A stretch of 64,000 bases of DNA from the IMG/VR virus record IMGVR_UViG_3300046616_000314, positions 62,001 to 126,000 of that record; one strand, written 5' to 3'. The notes beneath the pieces are model-generated. The model had not been told where the DNA came from. It did not search any database and was given only the letters and a program-made list of their open reading frames with translations. The position numbers and the translations under genes are program-made. How positions within the stretch are numbered: position 1 is the stretch's first letter; each line of letters opens with the position of its first letter. This document shows positions 3 through 63,867 of the stretch, one piece after another.

Positions 3-2219
3 GCCCGTATTCAATTCTACGACGGCATGGCTACCGAGACTATCGACAAGCTATTGCTACGCGCCATGATCGATCTAATCGACGTGTCGGATGACCCGGA
101 AACTGGTCACACCAACTACCAATACGTTGCCGGTCGCCAACGTCTGTCCATGCTCCGCAAGGAAGTCTACGGACAATACGAGCCGCCGCGCCTTTATGAT
201 ATCGTCAAGAAGAACGTCAAGGCGAAGCTGTACACCAAGGAACTACTGAACTGGTACAGTGAAGCCGAGTGGGATCAGATCGATTCGTTCATCGATCACA
301 AGAAAGACCTGAAGTATTCGTACGCTGCTATTGAACAATTGGCAGAAAAGTATCTGGTCAAGAACCGCGCCACTAAGGAAATCTACGAAACTCCGCAAGT
401 TCGTTACGCGATTGCTGCTGCAACAGCCTTCCATAACGAACCCAAAGAGAGCCGTATGGGCTATGTTAAGGATTACTATGCCTACGGCTCAAACGGCGCC
501 TTCACCCTGGCTACACCCGTCCTGGCGGGCTTGGGAACCCCCACAAAGCAGTTTTCTTCGTGCGTTCTAATCCGTAGCGATGACGATCTCGATTCCATCT
601 TCGCTACTGGCGAAATGATGGCGAAGTATGCTGCGAAGCGTGCGGGCATCGGTCTCGAAATTGGTCGCTTGCGTGGTCTAGGTGCGCCTATCCGCTTCGG
701 CGAGATCATGCACACCGGCTTGGTTCCCTTCCTGAAGAAATGGTTCGGCGATCTGCGTAGCTGTTCGCAAGGCGGCATCCGCAATGCTTCGGCAACGGTT
801 CACCTTCCGATCTGGCACTACCAGTTTGATGACTATATCGTCCTGAAGAACAATCAGGGCACGGAAGAAAACCGCGTTCGTCACATGGACTATTCGGTTG
901 TCTTGAGCGCGTTCTTCTGGAACCGTTTCAAGCAAGGCGGCATGATTACGTTCTTCGATCCGAATGACGTGCCCGATTTGTACGAAGCGTTCTATTCGGA
1001 CGTGGAAAAGTTCAACGAACTGTACGTCAAGTACGAAAACTCTCCGTTGCTGCGTAAGAAGCAAGTTCCGGCTGAAACCGTCTTTAAGGATTGGTTGCTC
1101 AAGGAACGTTCGGACACCGGTCGTATCTACATGGTGTTTATCGACAACGTTATTCGTCACTCGCCGTTCGACAGCAAGACGCACCCGATCTATCAATCCA
1201 ACCTCTGCCAAGAAATTCTTCTACCTACGAAGTCTTTCAAGCGCATTGATGACGTTGAAGGTCGTATCGCACTCTGCACCTTGGGTTCGATGAACTGGGG
1301 TAAGTTCAAAGAGCCTGCCGACATGGAACGTGCGGCAAAGGTTCTGGTCCGCGCTCTGTCGAACGTCCTAGGCTATCAGGACTTCTTGAGCGTCCAATCG
1401 AAGCTGGCAAACGATGAGTTTGAACCTCTGGGCGTCGGCATCACCAACCTTGCTTACTGGCACGCTAAGCGTGGCTACAAGTACGGCACGGAAGAGTCGC
1501 TGAAGGAAGTTCGTCGTTGGATGGAACACCAAGCGTTCTATCTGACTGAAGCCACGGTTCAACTGGCTGAAGAACGCGGCGCCTGTAAGCTGTCGCATAC
1601 CACGTCGTACGGTCAGGGCGTCTTCCCTTGGGAAAATCGCGCCAAGGGCGTCAACGAACTGACGGACTTCACGCCTAGCCTGGATTGGGAACCGCTGCGC
1701 ACCCGTATGATCAAGTACGGTGTCCGCAACGCTACCCTGATGGCGATTGCCCCGGTGGAATCATCGTCGGTGGTGGTTGACTCGACCAACGGCATTGAAA
1801 TGCCGATGGATTTGATCTCGACCAAGGAATCCAAGGCTGGTTCGTTTATTCAAGTTGTTCCTGAGTATCTGAAGCTCAAGAACAAGTATCAGCTTATGTG
1901 GGATCAAACAGACTGCATCGAATACTTGAAGGTTGCGGCTGTTCTGTCTGCATTCTGTGATCAGTCTATCTCTACCAACACCTTCTATTCTCCGAAGCAC
2001 TTCGCTGATGGTAAGGTTCCGATTACGTTGGTGGCGAAGAACCTGATGCTTGCACATAAATGGGGCATCAAGACATTTTATTATAGCCTCATGGACAAGC
2101 AAGGTGCTAAAAATCAAACGTCGGTTGCGATGGAAAGCGAAGCCCTAACTGCGGTTACGGCTACGTTCAGTGCCTTCGATGAAAGCTTTGAAGACGATTG
2201 TGAAGCCTGCAAACTTTAA
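3..2219 (+). CDS. nrdA: Ribonucleoside-diphosphate reductase class Ia alpha subunit (5' end lies upstream of the window)
   Basis: FSSCVL, QSNLCQEI, CTLG, GIKTFYY and C-terminal CEAC motifs; frame is open from base 3 (ARIQFYDGM), matching the ATP-cone, so the ATG at 27 is internal. Confidence 0.97.
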   Translation, partial: ARIQFYDGMATETIDKLLLRAMIDLIDVSDDPETGHTNYQYVAGRQRLSMLRKEVYGQYEPPRLYDIVKKNVKAKLYTKELLNWYSEAEWDQIDSFIDHKKDLKYSYAAIEQLAEKYLVKNRATKEIYETPQVRYAIAAATAFHNEPKESRMGYVKDYYAYGSNGAFTLATPVLAGLGTPTKQFSSCVLIRSDDDLDSIFATGEMMAKYAAKRAGIGLEIGRLRGLGAPIRFGEIMHTGLVPFLKKWFGDLRSCSQGGIRNASATVHLPIWHYQFDDYIVLKNNQGTEENRVRHMDYSVVLSAFFWNRFKQGGMITFFDPNDVPDLYEAFYSDVEKFNELYVKYENSPLLRKKQVPAETVFKDWLLKERSDTGRIYMVFIDNVIRHSPFDSKTHPIYQSNLCQEILLPTKSFKRIDDVEGRIALCTLGSMNWGKFKEPADMERAAKVLVRALSNVLGYQDFLSVQSKLANDEFEPLGVGITNLAYWHAKRGYKYGTEESLKEVRRWMEHQAFYLTEATVQLAEERGACKLSHTTSYGQGVFPWENRAKGVNELTDFTPSLDWEPLRTRMIKYGVRNATLMAIAPVESSSVVVDSTNGIEMPMDLISTKESKAGSFIQVVPEYLKLKNKYQLMWDQTDCIEYLKVAAVLSAFCDQSISTNTFYSPKHFADGKVPITLVAKNLMLAHKWGIKTFYYSLMDKQGAKNQTSVAMESEALTAVTATFSAFDESFEDDCEACKL

Positions 2220-2461
2220 TGAATTTTCGCCTGAAACTTGCCCCGGATTTGATTGATAGAGTTTATGGATGGGCGGCTGATAACCACTCATTCATAACTC
2301 TCCGGGTGAGTATGGCGTATAAGAAATACACGGTTAGTCCTGAAGCGATCAGAATAATTGTTGTCGGTCTTAAGAATGACGAAGAACAGATTTCACATTT
2401 TAAGCTGAAATTTTCAGACTATATTTTAAACGATGAATTAAATTATATAGGTAATAGATGA
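2219..2461 (+). CDS. FKLK-motif family small protein between nrdA and nrdB
   Basis: LKNDEEQISHFKLKFSD; overlaps both neighbours. Confidence 0.7.
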   Translation: MNFRLKLAPDLIDRVYGWAADNHSFITLRVSMAYKKYTVSPEAIRIIVVGLKNDEEQISHFKLKFSDYILNDELNYIGNR

Positions 2462-3558
2462 GCCAATACGACTTTAGTAAAGTACCCAATTACTTAAACC
2501 GACAAATGTTCCTTGATCCGGCTGGTGGTGTAACCGTCCAACGCTTTGAAGATTTCGCCTATCCCAAGGTTGCCAAGTTCGAAGAATTGGGTCGTAGCTT
2601 CTTCTGGAACCCCGAAGAAATCTCGCTGACCCAAGACAAGTCTGACCATAAGAACGTTTCCGAAGCGACTAAGTTCGTCTTCACGCAAAACCTTCTGCGT
2701 CAAACTGCCCTGGACAGCATTCAAGGTCGCGCTCCTGCGCAAATCTTTGGTCCGGTTGCATCTGTTCCTGAATTGGAAGCGATGGTTATGGCTTGGAGTT
2801 TCTTTGAAGGAAACATCCACTCGCGTAGCTACAGCCACATTATCCAGAACGTCTACAACGTCCCCAAGGATCAATTCAATACGATCCATGACACGTCGGC
2901 TATCATTGATATGGCTGCGTCCATCGGTCGTTATTACGAGCATCTTCACATTCTGAATTGCCGCAAGGAAGTCGGCATGACGGTGACTGAAGAGGAACAT
3001 ATTCGGGCTATTTGGATGGCTATGAACGCCTCTTACGCCCTGGAAGCTCTGCGCTTCATGGTGTCGTTTGCAACCTCATTGGCGATGGTTGAAAACCGCA
3101 TTTACATCGGCAACGGCAACATCATCAGCCTGATTCTTCAGGACGAATTGTTGCACACCGAATGGACTGCCTATCTGATCAATCAGGTAGTCAAAGACGA
3201 TCCTCGCTTTGCTAAGGCGAAGGCTGAAATGGCTGGCGAAGTTTACGCCATGTACCAAGAAGTCATCGGCGAAGAAAAAGCGTGGGCTGACCACTTGTTC
3301 CAAAAGGGCGTCGTGGTTGGTCTGAACCCAGAGATCATGAAGACTTTCGTGGATTACATTGCGACTTTGCGACTGAAAGAAATCGGTCTGAAGTACGTTG
3401 AACATCCGACGAAGGTCAACCCGATCCCTTGGTTCAACAAGCACATGAACACGTCGAAGAAGCAAACGGCTCTCCAAGAATCGGAAAGCACGAGCTACGT
3501 CATCGGCATCATGAGCACGAATATTAATTACGAAGAATTACCCGATCTGGATATGTAA
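2458..3558 (+). CDS. nrdB: Ribonucleoside-diphosphate reductase class Ia beta subunit
   Basis: Di-iron/tyrosyl motifs LDSIQGR, EGNIHSRSY, LEALRF, DELLH and C-terminal ESTSY. Confidence 0.97.
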   Translation: MSQYDFSKVPNYLNRQMFLDPAGGVTVQRFEDFAYPKVAKFEELGRSFFWNPEEISLTQDKSDHKNVSEATKFVFTQNLLRQTALDSIQGRAPAQIFGPVASVPELEAMVMAWSFFEGNIHSRSYSHIIQNVYNVPKDQFNTIHDTSAIIDMAASIGRYYEHLHILNCRKEVGMTVTEEEHIRAIWMAMNASYALEALRFMVSFATSLAMVENRIYIGNGNIISLILQDELLHTEWTAYLINQVVKDDPRFAKAKAEMAGEVYAMYQEVIGEEKAWADHLFQKGVVVGLNPEIMKTFVDYIATLRLKEIGLKYVEHPTKVNPIPWFNKHMNTSKKQTALQESESTSYVIGIMSTNINYEELPDLDM

Positions 3559-3568
3559 GGAAAAAATT

Positions 3569-4050: not shown

Positions 4051-6837
4051 ATGACCATCGACTACAAAGATACCATCTTCCTCCCGAAGACAGATTTCCC
4101 CATGAATCGCGTCGCGGATGAAGCTGCTATTTTGGGTGGCATGGCTAACCATTACGCTTTCATGAGCGCGAACAATACCGGGACGCCGAAGTTCGTACTG
4201 CATGATGGACCGCCCTACGCCAACGGCAACCTTCATATGGGTCACGCCCTGAACAAGATCATCAAGGATATGGTGGTCCGTTCCAAGTATGGTCTAGGTT
4301 TTTCTGTCGATTATACGCCCGGCTGGGACTGCCACGGTCTTCCTATCGAGTGGAAGGTTGAACGCGAGCTTATGGAAGCTGGCGACAGCAAGTCCAATTA
4401 CACCGTCATGCAATTCCGTGAAATGTGTCGTGCGGAAGCCCTGAAGTGGGTTGATATCCAGCGCGAGCAATTCAAGAAGCTTGGTGTGCAAGCCAACTGG
4501 GATAATCCCTATCTGTCCACCAATACCGAAGCGGTCATCGCTGACGAACTGCTGAAGATCGCAGAGAGCGGTAAGCTGTATCGCGATCTCAAGCCCGTTC
4601 TGTGGAGCCCGATTGAAAAGACGGCTCTGGCTGAAGCCGAAGTTGACCACAAGGAACTGAACACCAAGCAAATCTGGGTGGGCTTCCCGGTCAAGAGCGG
4701 TTACGTGAACCTCCCCACGGATATGCGCCCCAATTCGGTGTCGGTCTTGATCTGGACGACGACGCCTTGGACCATTCCGTCTAACAAGGCGGTCGCGTTC
4801 AACCCAAAGATCGAATACGGACTGTATAAGCGTCCCGACCATACCGGCGGGGTGATCGTTGCTAAGTTCTATGCCCCTGATAGCTGGACGCTGTTGGGTG
4901 ACGTGAATCCTGCCCAACTGGAACTGTATCATCCGTTGCGCGGGCAAGCGGAACGCTATGACATCACCGTTCCCGTTCTAGAAGCCGATTTCGTGGAAGA
5001 AGGCGTGGGTACGGGGCTGGTGCATATCGCCCCGGAACATGGACCCGACGATTTCGCTGTTTGGAAAAAATATTTCCCACATGATCGCCTGGGCATGACG
5101 GTCGGGTCGGAAGGCGAATGGCAGTTCGACCTTGGATTCCCCTTCGGTGGCGTGAAGGTCGTTGAGGAATACGTCAAGGAAAAGAAAGGCAAGAAAGAAT
5201 ACACTTATTCTTTCAACGCAGCCAATCAGGTTGTGATCGATGTCTTGCGCGGTAATGGTCGCCTGTTCGGTGTAGAACCGATCAAGCTTTCGTATCCGCA
5301 TTCCTGGCGTTCAGGTTCGCCTCTGATCTATCGTGCGACGAAGCAATGGTTCATGAAACTTGATGGTGTTCGCCAGCAAGCCTTGGATTCACTCAAGAAA
5401 GTGACCTTTGTTCCCGATCAACGGCAAGCAAGACTTGAGAATGCCGTTTCAGGGCGTCCAGATTGGCTCCTAAGCCGTCAACGGGTCTGGGGCACGCCTA
5501 TGTGCCTTTTCACCAATAAAGGCTCTGGTGAGCTTCTAATCAACTCTGTGGTCAACGACAACATTCGCCGAGTGTTGGCGCAAGACCCTGATGCTTGGTG
5601 GACAACGCTGATCCCAGAATTCTTTGAAGGTTCTGGGCTGAATCATTACGACTACGAAAAGTGCAACGATGTCCTTGACGTTTGGTTTGACAGTGCTTGT
5701 AGCCTGAACCAAGCGGGTCTAGACGCGCCTGCTGATCTTTATATTGAAGGGTCGGACCAACATCGCGGTTGGTTCGGATCATCCTTGCTGAAGACCATCG
5801 CATCGGATGGTGTGGCGCCGTTTGAAACGTTGATCACGCATGGCTTCGTCCTTGATGGCAAGGGTGAGAAGATGTCCAAGTCCAAGGGCAACGTGATCGA
5901 TCCGCAAACGATCATCGATCAGTATGGTACCGACACGCTGCGTCTCTGGGTCGCCATGAGCGATTGGACGCAGGATGTCCGCGCGAGCGATGAGTCGTTC
6001 AAGACGGCGCATGACGCCTATCGCAAGCTGCGCAACACGCTGAAATATCTGATCGGGGCTACGAAGGATTTCAATCCGTTCGCCATTTCGGGTGGTCCGC
6101 TTGGAAACCATTCGGTCCTGCACGATTTGATGTATAAAGAAATGCAGATGGTGCAGCACAAAGCTCAACACGCCTACGACGAATATCGTTTCAAGGACGT
6201 TGTTAAGTTGATCATGGATTTCTGCACCAACGATCTGTCTTCGTTCTATTTCGATGTTTTCAAAGACACGCTGTATTGTGATCCTTTGGAATCAGCGGAG
6301 CGTCGTCACTATCTTTCTACTCTGTCAGCAATCTATATGATGCTGTCAAATATGTTGATGCCTATCATCCCCTTCACGTGCGAAGAGGGTGCTGATCATT
6401 CACAGAAGGGTCGTTGGATCACGACAAGCCGTTGGTATGTTAGTGAAAACTACGGCTGGGATCGTCGTCGCCTGGACGCCATCAAGGATGTTGTTCGTCG
6501 CGTCAATCTCGCATTGGAAGAAGCGCGCAACAACAAACTGATCGGCTCATCGGCGGAAGCCCACGTAATCGTTCAAGTCACGCCGTACGAAGAAGAATTG
6601 CTGAATGATGAAAGACCATCAGCGGCGATGATCTTCCGTACAAGCCAAGCCACGCTTGAAGTCGTGTACACAAGCCCGTCTGTATTGCAGGTCACAGTTG
6701 AAAAAGCCAAAGGTAAAAAATGCGCCCGAAGCTGGCTTTATAATGAAGGGGTGGGGAACGATAGTGAATACCCGGACATTTCCGAGCGGGATGCTGTCGC
6801 TGTACGCGAGTGGGTCAAGCGAAATGTTTCCGCTTGA
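4051..6837 (+). CDS. ileS: Isoleucyl-tRNA synthetase (bacterial type 1)
   Basis: LHDGPPYANGNLHMGH (HIGH), GWDCHGLPIE, WTTTPWT and GTGLVHIAPEHGPDD (editing domain), EGSDQHRGWF, KMSKS, C-terminal KCARSW. Confidence 0.97.
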   Translation: MTIDYKDTIFLPKTDFPMNRVADEAAILGGMANHYAFMSANNTGTPKFVLHDGPPYANGNLHMGHALNKIIKDMVVRSKYGLGFSVDYTPGWDCHGLPIEWKVERELMEAGDSKSNYTVMQFREMCRAEALKWVDIQREQFKKLGVQANWDNPYLSTNTEAVIADELLKIAESGKLYRDLKPVLWSPIEKTALAEAEVDHKELNTKQIWVGFPVKSGYVNLPTDMRPNSVSVLIWTTTPWTIPSNKAVAFNPKIEYGLYKRPDHTGGVIVAKFYAPDSWTLLGDVNPAQLELYHPLRGQAERYDITVPVLEADFVEEGVGTGLVHIAPEHGPDDFAVWKKYFPHDRLGMTVGSEGEWQFDLGFPFGGVKVVEEYVKEKKGKKEYTYSFNAANQVVIDVLRGNGRLFGVEPIKLSYPHSWRSGSPLIYRATKQWFMKLDGVRQQALDSLKKVTFVPDQRQARLENAVSGRPDWLLSRQRVWGTPMCLFTNKGSGELLINSVVNDNIRRVLAQDPDAWWTTLIPEFFEGSGLNHYDYEKCNDVLDVWFDSACSLNQAGLDAPADLYIEGSDQHRGWFGSSLLKTIASDGVAPFETLITHGFVLDGKGEKMSKSKGNVIDPQTIIDQYGTDTLRLWVAMSDWTQDVRASDESFKTAHDAYRKLRNTLKYLIGATKDFNPFAISGGPLGNHSVLHDLMYKEMQMVQHKAQHAYDEYRFKDVVKLIMDFCTNDLSSFYFDVFKDTLYCDPLESAERRHYLSTLSAIYMMLSNMLMPIIPFTCEEGADHSQKGRWITTSRWYVSENYGWDRRRLDAIKDVVRRVNLALEEARNNKLIGSSAEAHVIVQVTPYEEELLNDERPSAAMIFRTSQATLEVVYTSPSVLQVTVEKAKGKKCARSWLYNEGVGNDSEYPDISERDAVAVREWVKRNVSA

Positions 6838-7291
6838 TATCGTCTCCAAACACGTATTGAGCCGAACCCGTAAGTACGGTGCGGGTCATCCTGACCTGAA
6901 GCTAAACGTTCGCAAGTACCTTGATGCCCATTTTGGGCAATGGTCTTGGCAAGTTCGTACCGATGTTGTCGATTCGGACATGAAGCCTATTAAGCTGGTC
7001 CGCTTCAATTTGAATGGCGGACCCGGTATTGACGTGCGAAAAGAGGTACTTCTTTTCTACGTCAAGTTCACTAAGATGTACCAATTCGATTGGTTGAGTC
7101 TTTCGAGAGATCAAATGCATGTTGTTCGCATAACAAAGCCCGATTTCTATATCTCGACAGAAGTCAACGCATGGTTGGATGAACTGTGTACCGATCAAGG
7201 ATGGGTGTGCCTGGACGAAGGTCGGGATGGCGTCACTGTGTTCTTCTCCAATGAGGATAACGCGGCAACCTTCAAGTTGAAGTACGGATGA
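6824..7291 (+). CDS. FKLK-motif family protein
   Basis: FFSNEDNAATFKLKYG*; start moved to ATG 6824, overlapping the ileS end. Confidence 0.75.
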   Translation: MFPLDIVSKHVLSRTRKYGAGHPDLKLNVRKYLDAHFGQWSWQVRTDVVDSDMKPIKLVRFNLNGGPGIDVRKEVLLFYVKFTKMYQFDWLSLSRDQMHVVRITKPDFYISTEVNAWLDELCTDQGWVCLDEGRDGVTVFFSNEDNAATFKLKYG

Positions 7292-7527
7292 GACCAATCC
7301 CGCGCCATATTCTGTACGTGGATCGGGACAAATCAATTGATCCCGCGACCGGGGTGTTTTTGCCTGAATTCTATAAGTTCATGACGGACCAATATGGAAC
7401 AGCGAGTGGGGCATGGGCACGAGATTATATGTATTATTCTCGCACCGGGGATAACAATAAAATTGTGATCTTCATCTTTAAGGAAGACCCGGAATTCGCA
7501 ATGATGTTTAAGTTGAAATACGGATGA
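7288..7527 (+). CDS. FKLK-motif family protein
   Basis: FKEDPEFAMMFKLKYG*; ATGA overlap. Confidence 0.8.
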   Translation: MRPIPRHILYVDRDKSIDPATGVFLPEFYKFMTDQYGTASGAWARDYMYYSRTGDNNKIVIFIFKEDPEFAMMFKLKYG

Positions 7528-7901
7528 AAAGTCTCTTCGAAGCTATGCGCGAACGCGGATATGAGCCAACCGAAGCTTGTTGTGGTCCTATCCCGCGCGA
7601 CGCGCATGACGCATTTCTATATGAGCGAGTGTATGTCAAAGAAGCTGGTGGACCCCGATCCGTTACGGGTGATCGTGTCTCCCGTTCCAGTGAAGATATT
7701 TTCGATAATCATTGGCTGATAGTTGCATTTGACCAACCAGTCGCCATGAAAAGCGAACGATGGATTCAATGGATTGATTTGATCCAACAAGAGAAATATC
7801 AACCCTTTTTCTTTGATATGCGCAATCAGGCGAAGACAGTCCTCGCCTTTGGCTTTGCTGACGAAGAAGATGCAGTTCTAATGCGGTTGAAAATGCTATG
7901 A
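7524..7901 (+). CDS. FKLK-motif family protein
   Basis: FADEEDAVLMRLKML*; ATGA overlap. Confidence 0.8.
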   Translation: MKSLFEAMRERGYEPTEACCGPIPRDAHDAFLYERVYVKEAGGPRSVTGDRVSRSSEDIFDNHWLIVAFDQPVAMKSERWIQWIDLIQQEKYQPFFFDMRNQAKTVLAFGFADEEDAVLMRLKML

Positions 7902-8206
7902 AGGGTCATCGTATCTATTTCCCAATGAATGCCGGTGGATGCTGGCAGTATTTGGACCCTAGCCTTAGAAATCTAGAATTCACGTCGCCGGGAGCCGATA
8001 CTATTCCCGAGAACGCCGCCATCCTAACCTTTTCTAATTTCGGTACGCAACCGGATGACAGTAAAGAGAATATACGATGGAACGAATTCATGCGATTACA
8101 GGCATCGGGGCATAACGCATGGTTCATTTCGTTTGACACGCCGACGTTTGCTCTAGAGTTTGAAACCGAAGAAGAAGCTTTCAAGTTCAAGTTGAAATTC
8201 GGATGA
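7898..8206 (+). CDS. FKLK-motif family protein
   Basis: FETEEEAFKFKLKFG*; ATGA overlap. Confidence 0.8.
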   Translation: MKGHRIYFPMNAGGCWQYLDPSLRNLEFTSPGADTIPENAAILTFSNFGTQPDDSKENIRWNEFMRLQASGHNAWFISFDTPTFALEFETEEEAFKFKLKFG

Positions 8207-8616
8207 GCCTGCAACATTTTCGGTCTGACGTTAACAAAGAGGTTTTCTTTCTGGAAACCAAGTGGGTAGGGCAAACTGCCACTACCTACGTTATTTCTAT
8301 GGATGACCATGGGAACCGGAGATATTACGCGGTTGTTCCGTTAGAAGATGTAAAAGCACTTGCTAAAACCGATCTGCATTACCACGTTCGGAAAGATTTC
8401 GCAGTCAACGTCAAGATTCCTGTTCCCGAACATAGGGAGACAGGGGTGACGACTTATAGCTTGCTCGCGCCCCATATGTCATGGATCGCCCATAACGTGA
8501 AAACAAAATGGTCGATGACCACTCCGTTTGCCAATAAAAACGTCATGGCTATCAACATGACCTTTTACTTTGGTGACGAAATCGAGGCGGCTGCGTTCAA
8601 GCTGAAATTCGTATGA
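8203..8616 (+). CDS. FKLK-motif family protein
   Basis: FGDEIEAAAFKLKFV*; ATGA overlap. Confidence 0.8.
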   Translation: MSLQHFRSDVNKEVFFLETKWVGQTATTYVISMDDHGNRRYYAVVPLEDVKALAKTDLHYHVRKDFAVNVKIPVPEHRETGVTTYSLLAPHMSWIAHNVKTKWSMTTPFANKNVMAINMTFYFGDEIEAAAFKLKFV

Positions 8617-8945
8617 TTTTGATGGATGTATTAGAAGGCGTTTCGCGCGGAGAAATTCGCGCCCTTGGTCTCATTGAAGAGGATGATGGGCAAGTTCGGT
8701 GTGATTTTTTGAATTACACTCAAAAACTTGACCCATTGCATATAACGACCGATGGTTTCTTCTTAGTGTTAAGCAACGGCGATGATGGATTGTGTACGGG
8801 CACACGTTGGAGTAACATCATTGCGTTTTGTCATTCGTTCAGAGGCAAGATGTATCAATCTAATGACCGAAGAGACCAAGTGTATATAATCTTCGACATG
8901 CCTTCAGAAGAAGAAGCTATGCTATTGAAGTTGAGACTCGGATGA
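8613..8945 (+). CDS. FKLK-motif family protein
   Basis: MPSEEEAMLLKLRLG*; ATGA overlap. Confidence 0.8.
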   Translation: MILMDVLEGVSRGEIRALGLIEEDDGQVRCDFLNYTQKLDPLHITTDGFFLVLSNGDDGLCTGTRWSNIIAFCHSFRGKMYQSNDRRDQVYIIFDMPSEEEAMLLKLRLG

Positions 8946-9292
8946 AACTCGTTGACGCAGTTCCGCATATGTCGCGATACCGGCACGTATTTCCTATGGG
9001 GCGAACACCGGGTAAATTTTTTCTCCTCCATAAGGACAAAGAAGAAAAAATCTCCAATACAATTCACTGGGACAAGGTACGTAAAATCACGGGCAAGCGT
9101 TGGGTGATTTTCGAGTTTGAAAACCGAAACAATTACTTAAAAAATCATTGGTCAGAATTCTCCCGGTATTGTAAGAGCCGGGCTCAGGCTGGTTACATGA
9201 TTGTGGATCGCTATGGAAATAATGTAACGATTGCATTGAATTTCCGCGCGGACGAAGATGCGTCCTATTGCAGATTGAGATTCAGCAAATGA
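8942..9292 (+). CDS. FKLK-motif family protein
   Basis: FRADEDASYCRLRFSK*; ATGA overlap. Confidence 0.75.
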   Translation: MKLVDAVPHMSRYRHVFPMGRTPGKFFLLHKDKEEKISNTIHWDKVRKITGKRWVIFEFENRNNYLKNHWSEFSRYCKSRAQAGYMIVDRYGNNVTIALNFRADEDASYCRLRFSK

Positions 9293-9618
9293 TCCAGCTA
9301 CGCCCCAACGAATTAATTACCGGGTTGATCATCGAAATCGCGTATTACTCGCGGGCAGATGGTACAAAGTACATTCGATATTCGAGTGTGCTAAATTCTA
9401 GAGGCGGACACGATAGACAAGAACTTACTCTATGTAGTCCGTTTGTTGTAAGCATAAAAAATAACAGACACATTGTTGATGATCCGCGTTTTATTGACTT
9501 TGTTGACAAGTTCACCGGAACTGTTGTATATAAGGACTCGACAGATGAAATCTTCATGGATTTTGCAAGTGAAGAAGACATCGTAATGTTCAAGTTTAAA
9601 ATGACAGGGCAATGCTAG
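9289..9618 (+). CDS. FKLK-motif family protein
   Basis: FASEEDIVMFKFKM; start moved to the ATGA overlap at 9289. Confidence 0.75.
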   Translation: MIQLRPNELITGLIIEIAYYSRADGTKYIRYSSVLNSRGGHDRQELTLCSPFVVSIKNNRHIVDDPRFIDFVDKFTGTVVYKDSTDEIFMDFASEEDIVMFKFKMTGQC

Positions 9619-9977
9619 AAGCGCAGCGCATAACAGTACCGACGACAATCCTAGCATATCGTCTATCACCTTGGACGACAGGGTTTTCGCTCACCTATGC
9701 TCAGCGCGATTCTAACCGCAATGGTGTACCCTGCGAAGTCATGGGCGCACACCTAGTCATTTTCCCGATGAAGATACTTTCGGAGATCAAACCGGAGTAT
9801 GAAAAATTTGTCGAGTTTTCGAAAACGTTTCCCGGTGAGATTTATTCGATCAAGCGGTTCTTCACACATGACCTTTCGCCTGGACGTGGCGAGCATATGC
9901 ATTTCTTGCTTTCATTCCCGACCGCTGAAGATGCCGTAATCTTCAAGATGCGTATGAAAGTGGATTACAACCTATGA
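9612..9977 (+). CDS. FKLK-motif family protein
   Basis: FPTAEDAVIFKMRM. Confidence 0.75.
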   Translation: MLEAQRITVPTTILAYRLSPWTTGFSLTYAQRDSNRNGVPCEVMGAHLVIFPMKILSEIKPEYEKFVEFSKTFPGEIYSIKRFFTHDLSPGRGEHMHFLLSFPTAEDAVIFKMRMKVDYNL

Positions 9978-10264
9978 ACGGCGCGGATGAAGTATACGCG
10001 GGTTATGTGGTCGAAATCTCAGATGACGAAATCAGCTATAAACTTAATGCACGCGGAAAGCAAATGCATGTGAGTTATCCATGCAATGAATGCGCCGTTC
10101 TGCGTCTTGATAAATCAACCGCATTGGGAGATTTGGACGTTACAGATTTCAGAAAAACTATGCAAACAATCTCAAGGAAAGCTACGGTATTCTTTGGCGG
10201 ATCATATGTTTTTCATTTCAAGAACCCAGATGATCTTATCCTGCATTGTCTGAAATACTCATGA
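9974..10264 (+). CDS. FKLK-motif family protein (divergent)
   Basis: FKNPDDLILHCLKYS*; ATGA overlap. Confidence 0.7.
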   Translation: MNGADEVYAGYVVEISDDEISYKLNARGKQMHVSYPCNECAVLRLDKSTALGDLDVTDFRKTMQTISRKATVFFGGSYVFHFKNPDDLILHCLKYS

Positions 10265-10641
10265 AACAAGTTACAGCTAAAATCATGAAACTTAGCGAAT
10301 TTGTTGCTCTACACAATCCGCGAGTTTGCGACGGCACGGTGGATTGCTATATCGATGAAGCAACGACTTGTGAGGACGAAGACCCGCGCAACTATTCCTG
10401 TGAACCCATTGCCGATGACGATCTTGAACTAATTGAATATCCTTGTTACACCGCGCATCATTTCACGCATTCTGAAATCTATAGCGACCGCTGGAACAGT
10501 GTGTTCAAAGCCGTCAAGGTGCATAAACTTCCGGCGTATTTTGTGGATTACCATCTAGGCGGTGTTCCCATAGAATCGTGCATTATCTTGGCGCACAAAA
10601 GCGACGAAGATGGCATGTTGTTTAAATTGAAACTCACATGA
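10261..10641 (+). CDS. FKLK-motif family protein
   Basis: HKSDEDGMLFKLKLT*; start moved to the ATGA overlap. Confidence 0.75.
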   Translation: MKQVTAKIMKLSEFVALHNPRVCDGTVDCYIDEATTCEDEDPRNYSCEPIADDDLELIEYPCYTAHHFTHSEIYSDRWNSVFKAVKVHKLPAYFVDYHLGGVPIESCIILAHKSDEDGMLFKLKLT

Positions 10642-42133: not shown

Positions 42134-42161
42134 AAGATACCAAAATTATTTCGATTGTCAA
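42134..42161 (-). promoter_or_regulatory. sigma70-like promoter
   Basis: TTGACA-N16-TATCTT. Confidence 0.7.
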
Positions 42162-44303: not shown

Positions 44304-44333
44304 AAGATACCAAACATTAACCGTCTTTGTCAA
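44304..44333 (-). promoter_or_regulatory. sigma70-like promoter
   Basis: TTGACA-N18-TATCTT. Confidence 0.55.
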
Positions 44334-50816: not shown

Positions 50817-50844
50817 AATGTACCACGGTCTTAGGCGTTGTCAA
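50817..50844 (-). promoter_or_regulatory. sigma70-like promoter
   Basis: TTGACA-N16-TACATT with TGG before the -10 box. Confidence 0.7.
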
Positions 50845-54418: not shown

Positions 54419-54422
54419 GACT

Positions 54423-56238: not shown

Positions 56239-56451
56239 TTATCTGAACTTCAACTTGAATAGCAATGCATCTTCTTCTGTACGAAACCATATTGTTTTCC
56301 GTACACACTCGTCATCAATCAAGTCGGTTTGTTCCTTATATTCCATTGTGGGATTCTTCTTAAAATATGCGCGAAGTCTCTGGCGCAACACTACGGATGC
56401 AGCCAGCGAATAATCTACTTCAATGGTTACGGAATGTTGATAGTCCTTCAT
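56239..56451 (-). CDS. FKLK-motif family protein
   Basis: WFRTEEDALLFKLKFR*. Confidence 0.8.
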   Translation of the reverse strand: MKDYQHSVTIEVDYSLAASVVLRQRLRAYFKKNPTMEYKEQTDLIDDECVRKTIWFRTEEDALLFKLKFR

Positions 56452-56714
56452 CCGAACTTCAGCTTGAAAATCATGGCGATCTCTTCGTCATCGAAATAGA
56501 ACGCTTGGGTTCGAATTCCGGTTGTATACATATTATTGTCGCGATGGTCGTATTCCCACATAACGTCTTCGGACAACGCACGGAACCATTCGGTGATAGG
56601 GTCATAGTCGTCGGGGTGATTGAGCGTGACCACGACTTTGCAAAGCCATGGATCATTTTTCTGGATCGCACTGAAACTACGGTCGGCTACGCCGTCTATG
56701 ACCAATTCTTTCAT
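56448..56714 (-). CDS. FKLK-motif family protein
   Basis: ITEWF; FYFDDEEIAMIFKLKFG*; start moved to the ATGA overlap. Confidence 0.8.
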   Translation of the reverse strand: MKELVIDGVADRSFSAIQKNDPWLCKVVVTLNHPDDYDPITEWFRALSEDVMWEYDHRDNNMYTTGIRTQAFYFDDEEIAMIFKLKFG

Positions 56715-57055
56715 TGGAATTTCAACTTGAACATCAGAAAGTCGTCTTCGCTTTCGAACACGAATTTCTTTTTGCAGCATTTTTCCAGTTTGCGGAGTGC
56801 GTAACCAACAGTTGTCGGCATAGCAGACCAATTGCCTACCGTTCCTGCCAGATGGTCGGTGAGACGCTGATAGAAGGCGCGGGTTTCCTCATCACATTGC
56901 GAATAGTTGTCGCTATGGTTGTTGAGTCCGAGTTTGTGGAACGGAAGATCGATTTCGATGATGTTGGGGTTTCCGCGCATACGAAGATGCAATCCGTTCA
57001 CCTTGCCACAGGCAACGGGATAGACCACACCAGCAGTACGCGGAACAAATGTCAT
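56711..57055 (-). CDS. FKLK-motif family protein
   Basis: GNW; FVFESEDDFLMFKLKFQ*. Confidence 0.8.
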   Translation of the reverse strand: MTFVPRTAGVVYPVACGKVNGLHLRMRGNPNIIEIDLPFHKLGLNNHSDNYSQCDEETRAFYQRLTDHLAGTVGNWSAMPTTVGYALRKLEKCCKKKFVFESEDDFLMFKLKFQ

Positions 57056-57369
57056 TTGCGATACTCGAATTTAATTTTGAACAACGCGCATTCATCAACA
57101 TTCTCAAACGCAAACGTCTTGAGAATGATATCATTTCGCCCCGGTCCCCGTCGTGCGCGTAGAGCCGAAACTTCTGTGCCATGATTGCGATAGGCGATCC
57201 AGGCGCCCTTCACGTGCTCCATATGAGCGGACAGCTTGCCGTAAATCTCTTCATCGGGTACGCCCCACGGAATCAAGACATCGACGGTGAGCGCATTCAC
57301 AAAGACGTACTCAGCCGCACGCTCGCATGACATGATCCAGCCACCGTGGATCAGCATGGGGCAGACCAT
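57052..57369 (-). CDS. FKLK-motif family protein
   Basis: KGAW; FAFENVDECALFKIKFE. Confidence 0.8.
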   Translation of the reverse strand: MVCPMLIHGGWIMSCERAAEYVFVNALTVDVLIPWGVPDEEIYGKLSAHMEHVKGAWIAYRNHGTEVSALRARRGPGRNDIILKTFAFENVDECALFKIKFEYRK

Positions 57370-57758
57370 TTCATACGGAAAAGCATACGATCCTCTTCGC
57401 TGAAGAAAATCAGACTATACACGGAATAGCGATTAAAACGCTCGCAAAGTTCTCTTCCATCCCGAAAATGGTCAAGATAAGTTTCGCTGAAGACCGGAGT
57501 ATAGCCAAGGGTTGTTTCACACCATTCCCTGATGTTGTCGTGCAGATTCGTGCGCTGTTCACCCGTTGGTTTGCCATCGGCGGCGAGCACGACCTTGGGA
57601 CCGAACATCGAGCGATTCACCGCATGATCGCGATTATGGTATTCCCAACGAATCAAGTACAATTGAGCTTGGAAGTGGGCTGTCCAGCCTGAACGAATGG
57701 AGCCTGTCTGCACGTTTCCCGTGCGTCCATCGACAAAATGTAAAGGCAGCATGGACAT
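57351..57758 (-). CDS. FKLK-motif family protein
   Basis: IREWCETTLG; FFSEEDRMLFRMKWS. Confidence 0.8.
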   Translation of the reverse strand: MSMLPLHFVDGRTGNVQTGSIRSGWTAHFQAQLYLIRWEYHNRDHAVNRSMFGPKVVLAADGKPTGEQRTNLHDNIREWCETTLGYTPVFSETYLDHFRDGRELCERFNRYSVYSLIFFSEEDRMLFRMKWSAPC

Positions 57759-62846: not shown

Positions 62847-63059
62847 ATGCAAATCCTAGAGCTTGATCCCGTGTGGACCCTGAACCTCAACACCAATGAC
62901 CTTCGGCTCGTTTTAAAGGCTCTAGGAGGGCGTTTACGAGAGGATGACACCAAGGATGCATTCGACCTTGGAGAACGGCTCACAGAGGCTCGTATCAGCG
63001 TCACACGGTCGCGGCTGAAGGCTATCGACAAGCTAGAGGAAAACTTTCGTAAGCCTTGA
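62847..63059 (+). CDS. Hypothetical protein
   Basis: SD AAGGA; start moved to MQILEL. Confidence 0.6.
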   Translation: MQILELDPVWTLNLNTNDLRLVLKALGGRLREDDTKDAFDLGERLTEARISVTRSRLKAIDKLEENFRKP

Positions 63060-63083
63060 CAATTTACGGAATTTTGGTAGTCT
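63056..63083 (+). promoter_or_regulatory. sigma70-like promoter
   Basis: TTGACA-N16-TAGTCT, six nt before the ATG at 63090. Confidence 0.65.
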
Positions 63084-63089
63084 GTTCGA

Positions 63090-63416
63090 ATGAACAAGGT
63101 GGAACTTCATCTTCTCGAAAAAAGCCGCTATGTGGCGCGACCAGGGAAACTCCTAAAGGACTTCCCTGATTGTGCCATTGTGGTGTTGGAGTATCGCATA
63201 TCGTTCTATCAAAATTTCGATATCGAGTCTGTTCACAACGAGATTACTAATCTGGTGATTGGTAAACTTGAAGGTAAATGGTCTCGGCGTAATCCTCATG
63301 GTTGGCAAGAACAACGTGAAATGGGTTACAATATCAGACAAACGTTCCTTTTCGAACGCGAAGAGGACGCGATGATGTTCAAAATTCTAACGAGTGTGCT
63401 CCCCTATGTTCAATAA
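63090..63416 (+). CDS. FKLK-motif family protein
   Basis: LEGKW; FLFEREEDAMMFKILT. Confidence 0.75.
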   Translation: MNKVELHLLEKSRYVARPGKLLKDFPDCAIVVLEYRISFYQNFDIESVHNEITNLVIGKLEGKWSRRNPHGWQEQREMGYNIRQTFLFEREEDAMMFKILTSVLPYVQ

Positions 63417-63867
63417 GCTGGTTGACATCGCGAAAGACGCTTGGAAAACGTTTCGGGAAGACGAGACGATTGCTCGTGTCAACGTGCGTGTGCCTGAGAA
63501 AATGGTCAGCACGGATCAAGATGTTCTCCAACTTCTGGCGCAACTTCGCACCACATGGCGTGCAAATATGGCGACTGGGGCTATTTCTCCTAACACACCG
63601 ATGCCAGTTCCACCGATTCCCGGTATCCACCGGAAGTCTTTCAACATCCAAGCGGGAAGCCAGCAGTCCAATCGCTATGGGCGCCCTGGCAATGCCTATG
63701 ATTGGGCTGAACCAGAAATTCTCGAATGGTTGCAAAAGACCTATCGCTATCCTGTCGTGTTGACCCGCTATTTCGACTACGGGACTCAGCAGCAAGAATA
63801 TCGCGTGACGTTCAAAACGGACGAACATGCGTCGCTGTTCATCCTGCGCTGGGTTGGCAATAAATGA
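63406..63867 (+). CDS. FKLK-motif family protein
   Basis: ILEWLQ; TFKTDEHASLFILRWVG. Confidence 0.7.
   Translation: MFNKLVDIAKDAWKTFREDETIARVNVRVPEKMVSTDQDVLQLLAQLRTTWRANMATGAISPNTPMPVPPIPGIHRKSFNIQAGSQQSNRYGRPGNAYDWAEPEILEWLQKTYRYPVVLTRYFDYGTQQQEYRVTFKTDEHASLFILRWVGNK

What the first reader, a model, noticed from the sequence alone, without database searches (positions are those of the whole stretch)
2219..63867. Massive expansion (~59 copies in 64 kb) of one small-protein family ending in F-x-x-x-E/D-D/E-A-x-x-F-K-L-K-F/W/Y
Seen in sequence: about 59 ORFs (roughly 50 clear, the rest divergent) of 66-233 aa share this motif, usually at the extreme C-terminus. It is often preceded by a helix with W-C/L-x-E-N and a G-x-W turn, while the N-termini are unrelated. 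They form coupled arrays at 6824-12615, 15309-20238, 33773-42544, 48518-50793, 56239-57758 and 63090-63867. Inference: the beta-strand F-x-F followed by an EEDA helix resembles the RNP1/helix-2 segment of RRM/ferredoxin-like folds. The family could be a constant scaffold or docking tag carrying hypervariable surfaces, for example an anti-defence or host-binding repertoire, or substrates and adaptors of one phage complex. I cannot assign it to a characterised family.
Basis: partly seen in the sequence, partly recalled or inferred. Interest (0 to 1): 0.85.

Follow-up and report, generated by a model that had tools for sequence, protein, structure and literature searches.

The report
Huge small-protein family in megaphage
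One 561-kb phage genome carries at least 175 diverged copies of a previously undescribed ~50-residue protein module, by far the largest gene-family expansion I could find reported for a phage, and smaller sets of the same module occur in cultured jumbo phages, so its unknown function can now be tested.

Summary
Fifty ORFs in the window (66-233 aa) belong to one family: 49 reach HMM E<1e-3, and the reversed-sequence control does no better than E 0.1. Conservation is at the protein level.

The window is bases 62,001-126,000 of a 561-kb IMG/VR contig. In the 26% of that contig I could fetch there are at least 175 members, including 73 consecutive ones in 25 kb.

The family is not private to this phage. 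About 1,800 unnamed protein clusters match it. Arrays of 9-25 copies occur in other 120-385-kb T4-core phage contigs. Cultured phages carry 1-14 copies: PA5oct, Phosso and Atu_ph07.

It matches no Pfam, PHROGs, NCBIfam or PDB entry, and the one scan of bacterial genomes found nothing.

AlphaFold predicts a small beta-alpha-beta-beta-alpha module. It is ferredoxin-like in class, but no fold match is significant. Every residue of the final helix is conserved.

My best reading is a tandemly duplicated, translationally coupled, probably early-expressed repertoire of host-directed binders. This is inferred (confidence about 0.4). Function is untested.

The parts
2219..2461 (+). family member, 80 aa, lying between nrdA and nrdB; 15-aa tail after the motif
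   Evidence: joint HMM E 7e-06, external-only HMM E 9e-04
6824..7291 (+). family member, 155 aa, first of the + strand array
   Evidence: E 3e-12 / 2e-10
7288..7527 (+). family member, 79 aa
   Evidence: E 2e-09 / 1e-06
7524..7901 (+). family member, 125 aa
   Evidence: E 2e-10 / 6e-05
   Evidence: E 9e-10 / 9e-07
8203..8616 (+). family member, 137 aa
   Evidence: E 3e-11 / 2e-09
8613..8945 (+). family member, 110 aa
   Evidence: E 2e-11 / 3e-06
8942..9292 (+). family member, 116 aa
   Evidence: E 4e-12 / 7e-08
9289..9618 (+). family member, 109 aa (ATG at 9289 overlapping the upstream stop)
   Evidence: E 6e-08 / 2e-05
9612..9977 (+). family member, 121 aa
   Evidence: E 2e-09 / 1e-05
9974..10264 (+). 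marginal candidate, 96 aa, inside the array
   Evidence: E 0.009 (joint HMM) and 0.007 (fam_ext HMM); not counted among the 50
10261..10641 (+). family member, 126 aa
   Evidence: E 5e-08 / 6e-03
10638..10946 (+). family member, 102 aa
   Evidence: E 1e-09 / 8e-06
10943..11425 (+). family member, 160 aa
   Evidence: E 7e-15 / 1e-10
11885..12253 (+). divergent member, 122 aa (…AKVKVG); paralogue of the next gene
   Evidence: E 2e-06 with the joint HMM, not found by the external-only HMM; N-terminal blastp E 4e-14 to 12250-12615
12250..12615 (+). divergent member, 121 aa (…ARVKNG)
   Evidence: E 2e-03 with the joint HMM; 39% domain identity to 11885-12253
15309..15548 (-). family member, 79 aa; best-scoring member
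   Evidence: E 2e-16 / 2e-15; ESM Atlas model pTM 0.69
15800..16000 (-). family member, 66 aa, the shortest; modelled with AlphaFold
   Evidence: E 4e-13 / 2e-10; mean pLDDT 84
15997..16344 (-). family member, 115 aa
   Evidence: E 3e-11 / 1e-08
16341..16592 (-). family member, 83 aa
   Evidence: E 2e-12 / 8e-09
16589..16861 (-). family member, 90 aa (GTG start)
   Evidence: E 1e-13 / 2e-12
17487..17921 (-). family member, 144 aa; module at the N-terminus, 70-aa tail
   Evidence: E 8e-13 / 8e-11
18428..18763 (-). family member, 111 aa, 25-aa tail
   Evidence: E 2e-07 / 2e-06
18756..19082 (-). family member, 108 aa, 43-aa tail
   Evidence: E 1e-12 / 7e-10
19079..19297 (-). family member, 72 aa
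   Evidence: E 3e-09 / 4e-07
19294..19512 (-). family member, 72 aa
   Evidence: E 6e-13 / 1e-08
19505..19846 (-). family member, 113 aa
   Evidence: E 2e-10 / 1e-08
22293..22631 (-). family member, 112 aa (ends …MFKVLQ)
   Evidence: E 2e-06 / 6e-05
26088..26435 (-). family member, 115 aa
   Evidence: E 2e-07 / 1e-04
26577..27032 (-). family member, 151 aa
   Evidence: E 2e-10 / 1e-08
33773..34108 (-). family member, 111 aa
   Evidence: E 1e-05 / 2e-03
34105..34461 (-). family member, 118 aa
   Evidence: E 3e-11 / 2e-07
34458..34823 (-). family member, 121 aa
   Evidence: E 6e-05 / 1e-02
36596..36994 (-). family member, 132 aa
   Evidence: E 2e-07 / 3e-05
37723..38172 (-). family member, 149 aa
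   Evidence: E 2e-12 / 4e-10
38169..38621 (-). family member, 150 aa
   Evidence: E 7e-14 / 5e-11
38618..39046 (-). family member, 142 aa
   Evidence: E 8e-15 / 7e-10
39445..40146 (-). family member, 233 aa, the longest; no Pfam domain in its N-terminal 170 aa
   Evidence: E 3e-07 / 3e-05
40143..40838 (-). family member, 231 aa
   Evidence: E 4e-09 / 1e-08
40838..41305 (-). family member, 155 aa, 44-aa tail
   Evidence: E 2e-09 / 2e-05
41432..41803 (-). family member, 123 aa; fits the strict motif
   Evidence: E 1e-07 / 2e-08
42173..42544 (-). family member, 123 aa
   Evidence: E 2e-06 / 2e-04
49581..49892 (-). family member, 103 aa; ends exactly at …FKLRV
   Evidence: E 6e-07 / 5e-05
50425..50793 (-). 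divergent member, 122 aa
   Evidence: E 5e-04 with the joint HMM only
56239..56451 (-). family member, 70 aa; fits the strict motif
   Evidence: E 9e-13 / 1e-09
56448..56714 (-). family member, 88 aa
   Evidence: E 6e-13 / 3e-10
56711..57055 (-). family member, 114 aa
   Evidence: E 3e-08 / 1e-05
57052..57357 (-). family member, 101 aa
   Evidence: E 1e-06 / 2e-03
57351..57758 (-). family member, 135 aa
   Evidence: E 6e-15 / 8e-11
63090..63416 (+). family member, 108 aa; first of an array that runs on past the window end
   Evidence: E 2e-12 / 5e-09; 7 + 20 further members in L037 and L073
63406..63867 (+). family member, 153 aa
   Evidence: E 7e-13 / 3e-09
42138..42161 (-). promoter-like site TTGACA-N13-TGGTATCTT (sigma-70 type with extended -10), followed by GGAG and the ATG of ORF 41803-42105, which heads the 33773-41803 array
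   Evidence: motif found 7 times against 0.49 expected; sequence
50821..50844 (-). same promoter-like motif, just upstream of member 50425-50793
63056..63079 (+). same promoter-like motif, 11 nt upstream of member 63090-63416
26009..26032 (-). same promoter-like motif, in the gap just downstream of member 26088-26435
44308..44333 (-). same promoter-like motif, upstream of ORF 44007-44270 (not a member)
48529..48552 (-). same promoter-like motif inside the 48518-50793 block

Best explanation
This is a phage-specific multigene family of small soluble proteins.

Shown:
- Each member contains one ~50-residue module. It has a helix carrying phi-x-x-W-[CL]-x-x-N, then two short strands (aromatic-x-phi and phi-x-phi-x-F), then a terminal helix [NDST]-E-E-D-A-phi-phi-F-K-L-[KR]-[WFY] that usually ends the protein.
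- The rest of each protein, an N-terminal extension of 10-180 aa or sometimes a tail, is unrelated between copies.
- The family grew by tandem duplication followed by deep divergence.
- Members sit in head-to-tail runs with ATGA stop/start overlaps.
- There are at least 175 copies in this 561-kb genome.
- The family is absent from the cellular genomes scanned and present in many T4-core jumbo phages.

Inferred:
- The runs are operons read by the host RNA polymerase from sigma-70-type extended -10 promoters. They would therefore be made early and translated by coupling.
- The module is a compact, stable beta-alpha-beta-beta-alpha scaffold.
- The copies act as a diversified set of binders or inhibitors of host proteins (takeover and counter-defence). 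Each copy would present a different surface or extension.
- The invariant last helix is the keystone of the fold and possibly a shared contact site.
For: One family, conserved at the protein level.

Tandem origin: adjacent copies are more alike than random pairs (2 of 2000 and 1 of 2000 permutations reach the observed value). Divergence is deep: median domain identity is 17% and the maximum 39%.

Scale: 73 consecutive members lie in 24,960 bp, and 175 distinct members in 146 kb sampled.

Copy number varies widely between related phages. PA5oct has 2, Atu_ph07 has 1, Phosso has about 14, uncultured 120-385-kb contigs have 9-29 per 10-36 kb sampled, and this contig has at least 175.

Phage-only distribution: 340 representatives and 1,839 clusters match, all unnamed. 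The GTDB genome scan found none. ESM Atlas neighbours are 89-100% viral.

Operon features: the motif TTGACA-N13-15-TGGTA occurs 7 times against 0.49 expected. Three sites sit directly before family genes, and one is followed by GGAG and an ATG. There are 27 ATGA overlaps.

Physical properties: members are soluble and heterogeneous, with pI 4.8-9.4 and only 3 of 50 with a TM-like segment.

Not virion proteins in PA5oct: EST35_0274 and EST35_0275 lack the record's ESI-MS/MS note, while neighbouring genes carry it.

Confident common fold: pLDDT is 84 and 76, and 90 or more over the core.

Setting: the genes lie among nrdA/nrdB/glutaredoxin, dNMP kinase and homing-endonuclease genes, as the accessory early genes of T4 do (T4 layout).
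Against: There is no direct evidence of function, expression time or binding partner.

The promoter inference rests on 6-7 sites. The general sigma-70 scan is no better than chance.

Many members are little more than the module itself (66-80 aa), so 'variable surface' rests on loop and surface variation that I could not map in three dimensions.

Conservation of every residue of the last helix, charged ones included, fits a shared partner better than a mere scaffold.

Some members are conserved orthologues in fixed synteny downstream of a phage ClpP. That is not what an arms-race repertoire predicts for those copies.

The contig is a metagenome assembly that I could not check for chimerism.
Confidence: 0.4

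Rival explanations
1. Hub-docking adaptors. The invariant terminal helix, E-E-D-A-x-x-F-K-L-[KR]-[WF] at or near the C-terminus, is a docking element. It would attach every copy to one conserved machine of the phage or host, such as a protease, chaperone, polymerase or ribosome. The variable part would select a cargo or target, as poxvirus ankyrin/PRANC proteins dock on the SCF ligase.
For: All 11 helix positions are conserved, including E67 (77%), D68 (85%), K73 (90%) and K/R75 (98%). Helix 1 and the strands are conserved only at buried-type positions.

34 of 50 members end within 4 residues of the aromatic.

N-termini are unrelated.

In PA5oct and six uncultured relatives an orthologous member lies 0.5-1.2 kb downstream of a phage ClpP.
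Against: Acidic residues at the start of a helix and basic ones at its end also stabilise a short terminal helix on their own. Position 65 is a classic N-cap residue (N/D/S/T in 97 of 124 sequences).

16 of 50 members carry tails of 5-70 aa after the helix, so a free C-terminus is not required.

Many members have almost no variable part.

AlphaFold packs the helix on the module with pLDDT about 90.

The ClpP synteny may reflect common descent only. No ClpP was found in the 146 kb sampled from this contig.
Confidence: 0.25
2. RRM-like RNA-binding proteins. The module would be a truncated RNA-recognition motif: its strand phi-x-phi-x-F followed by E-D-A resembles RNP1 plus helix 2. The copies would regulate translation or stability of particular host or phage RNAs.
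For: The predicted order beta-alpha-beta-beta-alpha matches an RRM without its last strand. RRM domains are among the nearest Foldseek neighbours: nucleolin E 2.3, 1whv E 0.75, TRMT2A E 2.0, PARN E 3.2. F-x-F-x-x-x-E-D-A is typical of RRMs; this last point is from my own knowledge, not a tool result.
Against: No member or external relative matches Pfam RRM_1, even at E 0.1. No Foldseek match is significant. There is no fourth strand, no RNP2-type first strand is conserved, and the N-terminal strand is poorly predicted (pLDDT 52-68). pI ranges down to 4.8 with median net charge -1, which is not what nucleic-acid binders usually show.
Confidence: 0.08
3. Self-propagating or nearly neutral gene cassettes. 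The copies would multiply by unequal recombination at the conserved 3' ends that abut the next start codon, and persist with little benefit to the phage, inflating the genome.
For: Copies are tandem and wall-to-wall. A conserved sequence lies exactly at gene junctions. Adjacent copies are more alike than random pairs. Copy number differs enormously between relatives.
Against: All copies keep open frames and the same core residues at 17% median identity, with free synonymous variation. That requires long purifying selection on the protein. Orthologues are kept in synteny across distant phages.
Confidence: 0.1
4. Proteins packaged into the capsid and injected. The conserved helix would be a packaging signal, as the targeting sequence is for T4 internal proteins.
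For: The shared terminal element with varied 'cargo' would suit a sorting signal. Jumbo phages package many proteins: PA5oct has 93 virion proteins (PMC7318152).
Against: The two PA5oct members are not among the genes marked ESI-MS/MS in the record. The promoter-like sites before the arrays are of the host sigma-70 type rather than the T4 late type; TATAAATA occurs once in the window, and not at an array. No PHROGs structural family matches.
Confidence: 0.05

Closest known systems
Lineage-specific expansion of a zinc ribbon in Bacillus phage G (~35 copies; Iyer et al. 2021, PMC7824862)
   Same: One small domain multiplied many times within a single jumbo phage genome, with unknown function. 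That paper copies 'unprecedented'.
   Different: This expansion is at least five times larger (at least 175 copies). The fold has no metal-binding motif. The family is shared by many phages rather than private to one, and its copies are arranged in long coupled runs.
Multigene families of large eukaryotic viruses (African swine fever virus MGF110/360/505; poxvirus ankyrin/PRANC and Bcl-2-like families). Named from my own knowledge, not tested here.
   Same: Tandem arrays of diverged paralogues, copy number differing between strains, a constant structural element with variable remainder, and roles in host range and immune evasion.
   Different: Those families are in viruses of animals, their proteins are larger, and some functions are known. 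Here the host is bacterial, the proteins are 66-233 aa, and nothing is known of function.
RRM / ferredoxin-like alpha+beta sandwiches (ACT, PII-like, MESD, YajQ, ABM)
   Same: Predicted beta-alpha-beta-beta-alpha order, with two helices on one face of a small sheet. The strand-then-'EDA'-helix segment looks like RNP1 plus helix 2. These are the nearest structural neighbours.
   Different: No match is significant (best E 0.18). There is no last strand. No profile similarity was found. The invariant F-K-L-[KR]-[WF] end has no counterpart.
Small accessory early genes in the variable regions of phage T4 (nrdC.1-11, mobD.1-5, tk.1-4, vs.1-8 and others)
   Same: Short ORFs packed head to tail between nucleotide-metabolism genes and homing endonucleases, mostly of unknown function. 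Those that have been characterised inhibit host proteins or defences (my own knowledge).
   Different: The T4 genes are not one family. No member of this family was found in the first 99 kb of T4.
Arrays of immunity proteins of polymorphic toxin systems (e.g. SUKH superfamily). Named from my own knowledge, not tested here.
   Same: Tandem runs of small, diverged alpha+beta paralogues, each thought to neutralise a different partner.
   Different: Those arrays are cellular and adjoin toxin genes. This family was not found in the 185,579 species genomes scanned, and no toxin partner is evident.

Membership tests
RRM (Pfam PF00076 RRM_1) | Match to the family profile | tested here: not met
   No RRM hit for any of the 50 members or 20 external relatives at E up to 0.1
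RRM (Pfam PF00076 RRM_1) | Four-stranded beta-alpha-beta-beta-alpha-beta fold | tested here: not met
   The models end with the second helix; there is no fourth strand. In 34 of 50 members the protein stops within 4 residues. These are predictions only.
RRM (Pfam PF00076 RRM_1) | Significant structural similarity to solved RRMs | tested here: not met
   Best RRM matches have E 0.75-3.2 and TM 0.3-0.43
RRM (Pfam PF00076 RRM_1) | RNA binding through RNP1/RNP2 aromatic residues | not testable with these tools
   Needs binding assays. A conserved aromatic does exist at the start of strand 2 (89%) and F at the end of strand 3 (93%).
Any family in Pfam-A, PHROGs v4 or NCBIfam 20 | A profile match shared by several members | tested here: not met
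   No family is matched by more than one of the 50 members. None matches the external relatives. Precomputed Pfam is '-' for all 120 listed homologues.
Any protein of known structure (PDB) | Sequence-profile or fold match | tested here: not met
   hmmsearch best E 0.04-0.14. Foldseek best E 0.18-0.37. BFVD best E 0.2, to uncharacterised phage proteins.
Ring-building motif of type III secretion (EscJ/PrgK) | Significant alpha-beta-beta-alpha-beta structural match | tested here: not met
It is absent from the top of the second search.
Viral multigene family (lineage-specific expansion) | Many paralogues of one fold in one genome, in tandem arrays | tested here: met
   50 in the window, 73 consecutive in 25 kb, at least 175 in 146 kb sampled
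Viral multigene family (lineage-specific expansion) | Signs of tandem duplication | tested here: met
   Adjacent copies are more similar than random pairs, about 1 in 1000 by permutation. One recent pair: 11885-12253 and 12250-12615.
Viral multigene family (lineage-specific expansion) | Copy number varies among related viruses | tested here: met
   1-2 in Atu_ph07 and PA5oct, about 14 in Phosso, 9-29 per sampled stretch in uncultured jumbo contigs, at least 175 here
Viral multigene family (lineage-specific expansion) | Role in host range or evasion of host defence | not testable with these tools
   Needs deletion and expression experiments in PA5oct, Phosso or Atu_ph07

The most novel reading that the evidence does not exclude
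The invariant terminal helix is a docking tag. It would plug each of the 175 or more different small proteins into one machine. The lead candidate is the phage's own ClpP-type protease, next to which the most conserved family members sit in PA5oct-like phages. The family would then be a library of targeting adaptors that hands chosen host proteins, including defence proteins, over for destruction or sequestration. That would be a bacterial-virus counterpart of the poxvirus ankyrin/PRANC-SCF system.
Probability: 0.1. Interest if true: 0.92.

Novelty: new variant of a known kind. Interest (0 to 1): 0.78.

Why it matters
Why huge phages are huge is an open question. Here a single uncharacterised 50-residue module accounts for at least 175 genes of one 561-kb genome. 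That is roughly 55 kb of coding sequence in the quarter of the genome examined. In places the module fills 25 kb without interruption.

The expansion is several times larger than the largest one I found described for a phage (about 35 copies, PMC7824862). It suggests that genome gigantism in this lineage is partly built from one diversifying gene family, as in African swine fever virus or poxviruses.

The family is new to the databases, with no Pfam, PHROGs, NCBIfam or PDB relative. It is nonetheless common in environmental T4-core jumbo phages.

It also occurs in low copy number in phages that can be grown and engineered: PA5oct on Pseudomonas aeruginosa PAO1, Phosso on Sinorhizobium, and Atu_ph07 on Agrobacterium. 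Its function can therefore be tested directly. If the copies are inhibitors of host proteins or defences, they are a large untapped set of small binders on a minimal scaffold.

Tried and rejected
Only 3 hits, so I replaced it with HMMs.
- **Stop-to-stop segments as HMM input.** These brought in a false N-terminal motif ('VQVEIRM'). It is the previous gene's C-terminus read in the next frame across the ATGA overlap. I rebuilt the model with proper starts.
- **A DNA-level repeat or signal instead of a protein motif.** Rejected: synonymous codons vary freely. A mild excess of TTG-AAA at L-K remains unexplained.
- **Similarity beyond the motif within the window.** Weak in the leave-one-out test, though clear in the wider family.
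- **Searches that found nothing:**
  - megablast and tblastn of window genes against 50,697 phage records;
  - Pfam, PHROGs and NCBIfam;
  - PDB by sequence;
  - Foldseek against PDB and BFVD, nothing significant;
  - Rfam and tRNA scans of the window.
- **Domain fusions as a clue.** Only one was found, to DUF6794, itself of unknown function. A 1,107-aa helicase hit is probably spurious because it matches only non-motif positions.
- **Bacterial and archaeal genomes.** No confirmed relative. This tested only the pattern EDA[MI]AFKL, so divergent copies could be missed.
- **The search for related loci with the window alignment.** It failed for lack of a conserved 7-residue stretch.
- **T4.** No member in the first 99 kb. 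The remaining 70 kb were not scanned.
- **General sigma-70 and terminator scans.** No better than chance.
- **T4 late promoter TATAAATA.** One occurrence against 1.4 expected.
- **Per-gene expression of the PA5oct members.** Not in the paper's text, and no supplement is held.
- **Literature search for the motif string.** Nothing relevant.

Full report
**What the window is.** The 64-kb window encodes ribonucleotide reductase large and small subunits, a glutaredoxin, a class I aminoacyl-tRNA synthetase, a T4-type dNMP kinase, an HNH-NUMOD3 endonuclease and an ART-PolyVal ADP-ribosyltransferase. It has no near relative among 50,697 deposited phage genomes. A 596-aa protein locates it on IMGVR_UViG_3300046616_000314, a 561,116-bp contig. 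An overlap check places the window at contig bases 62,001-126,000.

Even so, the C-termini of the tiling ORFs visibly share a degenerate form of it.
- An HMM seeded from those tails and iterated over every six-frame stop-to-stop segment converges on 49 segments at E<1e-3. The reversed sequences give nothing better than E 0.1-1.
- After assigning start codons I count 50 members of 66-233 aa.
- A model built only from 114 relatives on other contigs recovers 43, 48 and 50 of them at E<1e-3, 1e-2 and 0.1, with no reversed hit.
- At every conserved position the synonymous codons vary roughly as in the rest of the genome, so the protein is what is conserved, not a DNA signal.
27 stops are overlapped by the next ATG (ATGA).
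- The N-terminal parts are unrelated by blastp, except for one trio.

**Cautions on the observation.**
- The nine or so extra 'divergent' copies cannot be told from chance.
- The upstream W-x-x-x-N helix and G-x-W turn are seen in only 12-17 and 8 of the 50 members.
- With the motif cut off, the remaining similarity inside the window is weak.
- A seemingly conserved 'VQVEIRM' before many start codons is only the previous gene's F-K-L-K-F-G-stop read in the next frame.

**How large is the expansion?** Two DNA-pattern scans of IMG/VR brought in other parts of the same contig.
- Contig bases 363,575-388,534 hold 73 consecutive members in 24,960 bp, about 310 bp each.
- The array that starts at window base 63,090 runs on for at least 27 more genes.
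- In all I count 175 distinct members in 146,149 bp, which is 26% of the contig. The sampling favours family-rich parts.
- Adjacent copies are slightly but significantly more alike than random pairs. Overall identity within the module is very low: median 17%, maximum 39%. This points to tandem duplication followed by long divergence.
- For comparison, a survey of 224 jumbo phages calls a 35-copy zinc-ribbon expansion in phage G 'unprecedented' (PMC7824862).

**Is it private to this phage?** No.
- A profile search of 1.84 billion representative proteins finds 340 at E<=1e-3. Of the best 150, 119 are not from the window.
- A second search finds 1,839 clusters, none with a name beyond 'hypothetical' and none with a Pfam domain.
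- Outside the window the consensus is sharper: …I-x-x-W-C-x-E-N-C…[WYF]-x-[IV]…[IFV]-x-F-x-N-E-E-D-A-M-A-F-K-L-R-W-stop.
- Other contigs carry arrays too. A 28-kb contig beside a gp23-type capsid gene has 23 members in 8.7 kb. Stretches of contigs of 31-385 kb hold 25, 25, 19, 18, 17, 16 and 15 members.
- About 55 other IMG/VR contigs hold at least one confirmed member (my count).
- Their marker genes are T4-type: portal gp20, gp15, tail sheath, family B polymerase.
- The capsid protein next to one array is 79% identical to that of Sinorhizobium phage Phosso. It is 66-69% identical to those of Vibrio phage 2.275.O, Agrobacterium phage Atu_ph07 and Pseudomonas phage PA5oct. These are the T4-derived 'group 2.2' jumbo phages of PMC7824862.
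- A tblastn with the profile consensus then finds the family in cultured phages: 14 places in Phosso, 2 in each PA5oct-like phage and 1 in Atu_ph07. The HMM confirms PA5oct EST35_0274 and EST35_0275 and five Phosso ORFs.
- T4 itself has none in its first 99 kb.
- A scan of one genome for each of 185,579 bacterial and archaeal species found no relative.

**What is the module?**
- It has no match in Pfam, PHROGs, NCBIfam or the PDB.
- AlphaFold2 models the 59-residue core of window gene 15800-16000 with mean pLDDT 84: helix, short strands, helix.
- It models a 77-aa external member with a 124-row alignment as strand, helix, strand, strand, helix. pLDDT is about 90 over the last 45 residues and lower for the first strand.
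- The nearest structures are all two-layer alpha+beta sandwiches of the ferredoxin-like class: ACT, RRM, PII-like, MESD/Boca, YajQ and ABM. None is significant; the best E is 0.18-0.37 and TM 0.4-0.66.
Membership of the RRM family fails every test I could run.

**Pattern of conservation.** The pattern is informative.
- In helix 1 and the strands only buried-type positions are kept: I/V37, W40 at 95%, C/L41, N44 at 76%, an aromatic at 49, I/V51, phi61 and F63 at 93%.
- In the last helix all eleven positions are kept. These include the N-cap and the charged E66, E67, D68, K73 and K/R75, as well as A69, F72, L74 and W/F76.
- This could reflect the needs of a short terminal helix, with acidic residues at its start and basic ones at its end. 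It could also mark a shared contact surface. I could not decide between these without coordinates or complex predictions.

**How it probably works.**
- *Shown:* the family, its size, its tandem origin, its coupled arrangement, its phage-only distribution, its soluble and heterogeneous nature (pI 4.8-9.4), and its absence from the genes marked as virion proteins in PA5oct.
- *Inferred:* a motif TTGACA-N13-15-TGGTA, a sigma-70 promoter with extended -10, occurs 7 times against 0.49 expected. It sits directly before family genes at 42161, 50844 and 63056. The first site is followed by GGAG and an ATG. The runs therefore look like operons read early by the host polymerase and translated by coupling, since almost no internal gene has a Shine-Dalgarno sequence.
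- By analogy with the accessory early genes of T4 and with multigene families of large animal viruses (my own knowledge), the most likely role is a diversified set of small binders or inhibitors of host proteins, counter-defence included. I put this at about 0.4.

**Rival explanations.**
- The main rival (0.25) is that the invariant helix docks all copies on one machine. A lead, no more, is that a ClpP homologue lies in ten of the loci fetched solely by the family's DNA motif. In PA5oct and six uncultured relatives an orthologous member sits 0.5-1.2 kb downstream of it on the same strand. That may be inherited gene order only, and no ClpP was seen in the sampled part of this contig.
- An RNA-binding role, neutral cassette spread and capsid packaging are less likely, for the reasons given under rivals.

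**Verdict.** The finding is a real, new and very large phage gene family. Its function is unknown, but it is now open to experiment through cultured relatives.

Noticed in passing
window 26009-26032(-), 42138-42161(-), 44308-44333(-), 48529-48552(-), 50821-50844(-), 63056-63079(+): A recurring promoter-like motif TTGACA-N13-15-TGGTA[TC]nnT, of sigma-70 type with an extended -10. It occurs 7 times against 0.49 expected by shuffling. This suggests a proteobacterial-type host polymerase reads these blocks.
   Followed up: partly
window, upstream of most internal family genes (e.g. 7270-7290, 8185-8205): Stop-to-stop translations show a false conserved peptide 'VQVEIRM'. It is the previous gene's FKLKFG-stop read in the next gene's frame across the ATGA overlap. 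It can contaminate profiles built from such segments.
   Followed up: yes
L100 (PA5oct 178005-186175) and L012, L017, L020, L066, L070, L078: A phage ClpP homologue (48-53% identical to PA5oct EST35_0272) is followed 0.5-1.2 kb downstream, on the same strand, by a conserved orthologous family member (…IWCxxNxEG[RK]WTMLGG[NS]KFGFED…). More members lie 3-4.5 kb further on. Whether this is inherited gene order or a functional link is open.
   Followed up: partly
window 2219-2461: One family member sits between the nrdA and nrdB genes and overlaps both stops and starts. The site recalls where T4-type phages carry insertions in their nrd genes.
   Followed up: no
window 50841-56219 and 58546-61591 (- strand): Five large ORFs (562, 629, 596, 459 and 557 aa) have no Pfam match; PHROGs gives only one weak match, to a family of unknown function. 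The 596-aa ORF, the only one searched by tblastn, has no relative in the deposited phage genomes. The only TATAAATA in the window (62252-62259, -) lies just upstream of the gene that leads into the 58546-61591 pair.
   Followed up: partly
window 44644-46230 (+) and 43308-43991 (-): An ADP-ribosyltransferase of the 'polyvalent protein' type (ART-PolyVal, E 3e-19) lies next to an HNH-NUMOD3 homing endonuclease.
   Followed up: no
window 28414-29673 (-): A 419-aa protein combines a DFP (pantothenate-metabolism flavoprotein C-terminal) domain with a class II aldolase/adducin domain. This is an unusual pairing for a phage.
   Followed up: no
window 14204-15316 and 15541-15798 (- strand): A run of five small ORFs (83-102 aa) with strongly hydrophobic, membrane-like sequences is interleaved with the family array.
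   Followed up: no
motif codons of the 50 members: The L-K pair of F-K-L-K is encoded TTG-AAA more often than background usage predicts. AAA is used in 25 of 42 lysines against 37% expected, and TTG in 17 of 35 leucines against 25%. The first K follows background. Unexplained.
   Followed up: partly
one of the 50 members (not identified; not among the ten longest): There is a single sub-threshold match to type III secretion needle-tip proteins (Pfam T3SS_TC E 2e-4; NCBIfam SipD E 4e-4). It is probably chance.
   Followed up: partly
L005 11723-12277: One external member is fused to DUF6794 (E 5e-12). This is the only domain fusion found for the family.
   Followed up: no
Pseudoalteromonas phage RIO-1 (NC_021300) 18743-18919: There is a weak consensus match (E 0.2, 37% identity over 88% of the query) in a 44-kb podovirus. 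This hints that the module may also exist outside T4-core jumbo phages.
   Followed up: no
L101 (Phosso 163885-188022): In Phosso the family members are scattered among translation-related genes: cysteinyl- and seryl-tRNA synthetases, peptidyl-tRNA hydrolase, RNA ligase and a tRNA. In the window an array likewise follows an aminoacyl-tRNA synthetase. This may be coincidence.
   Followed up: no
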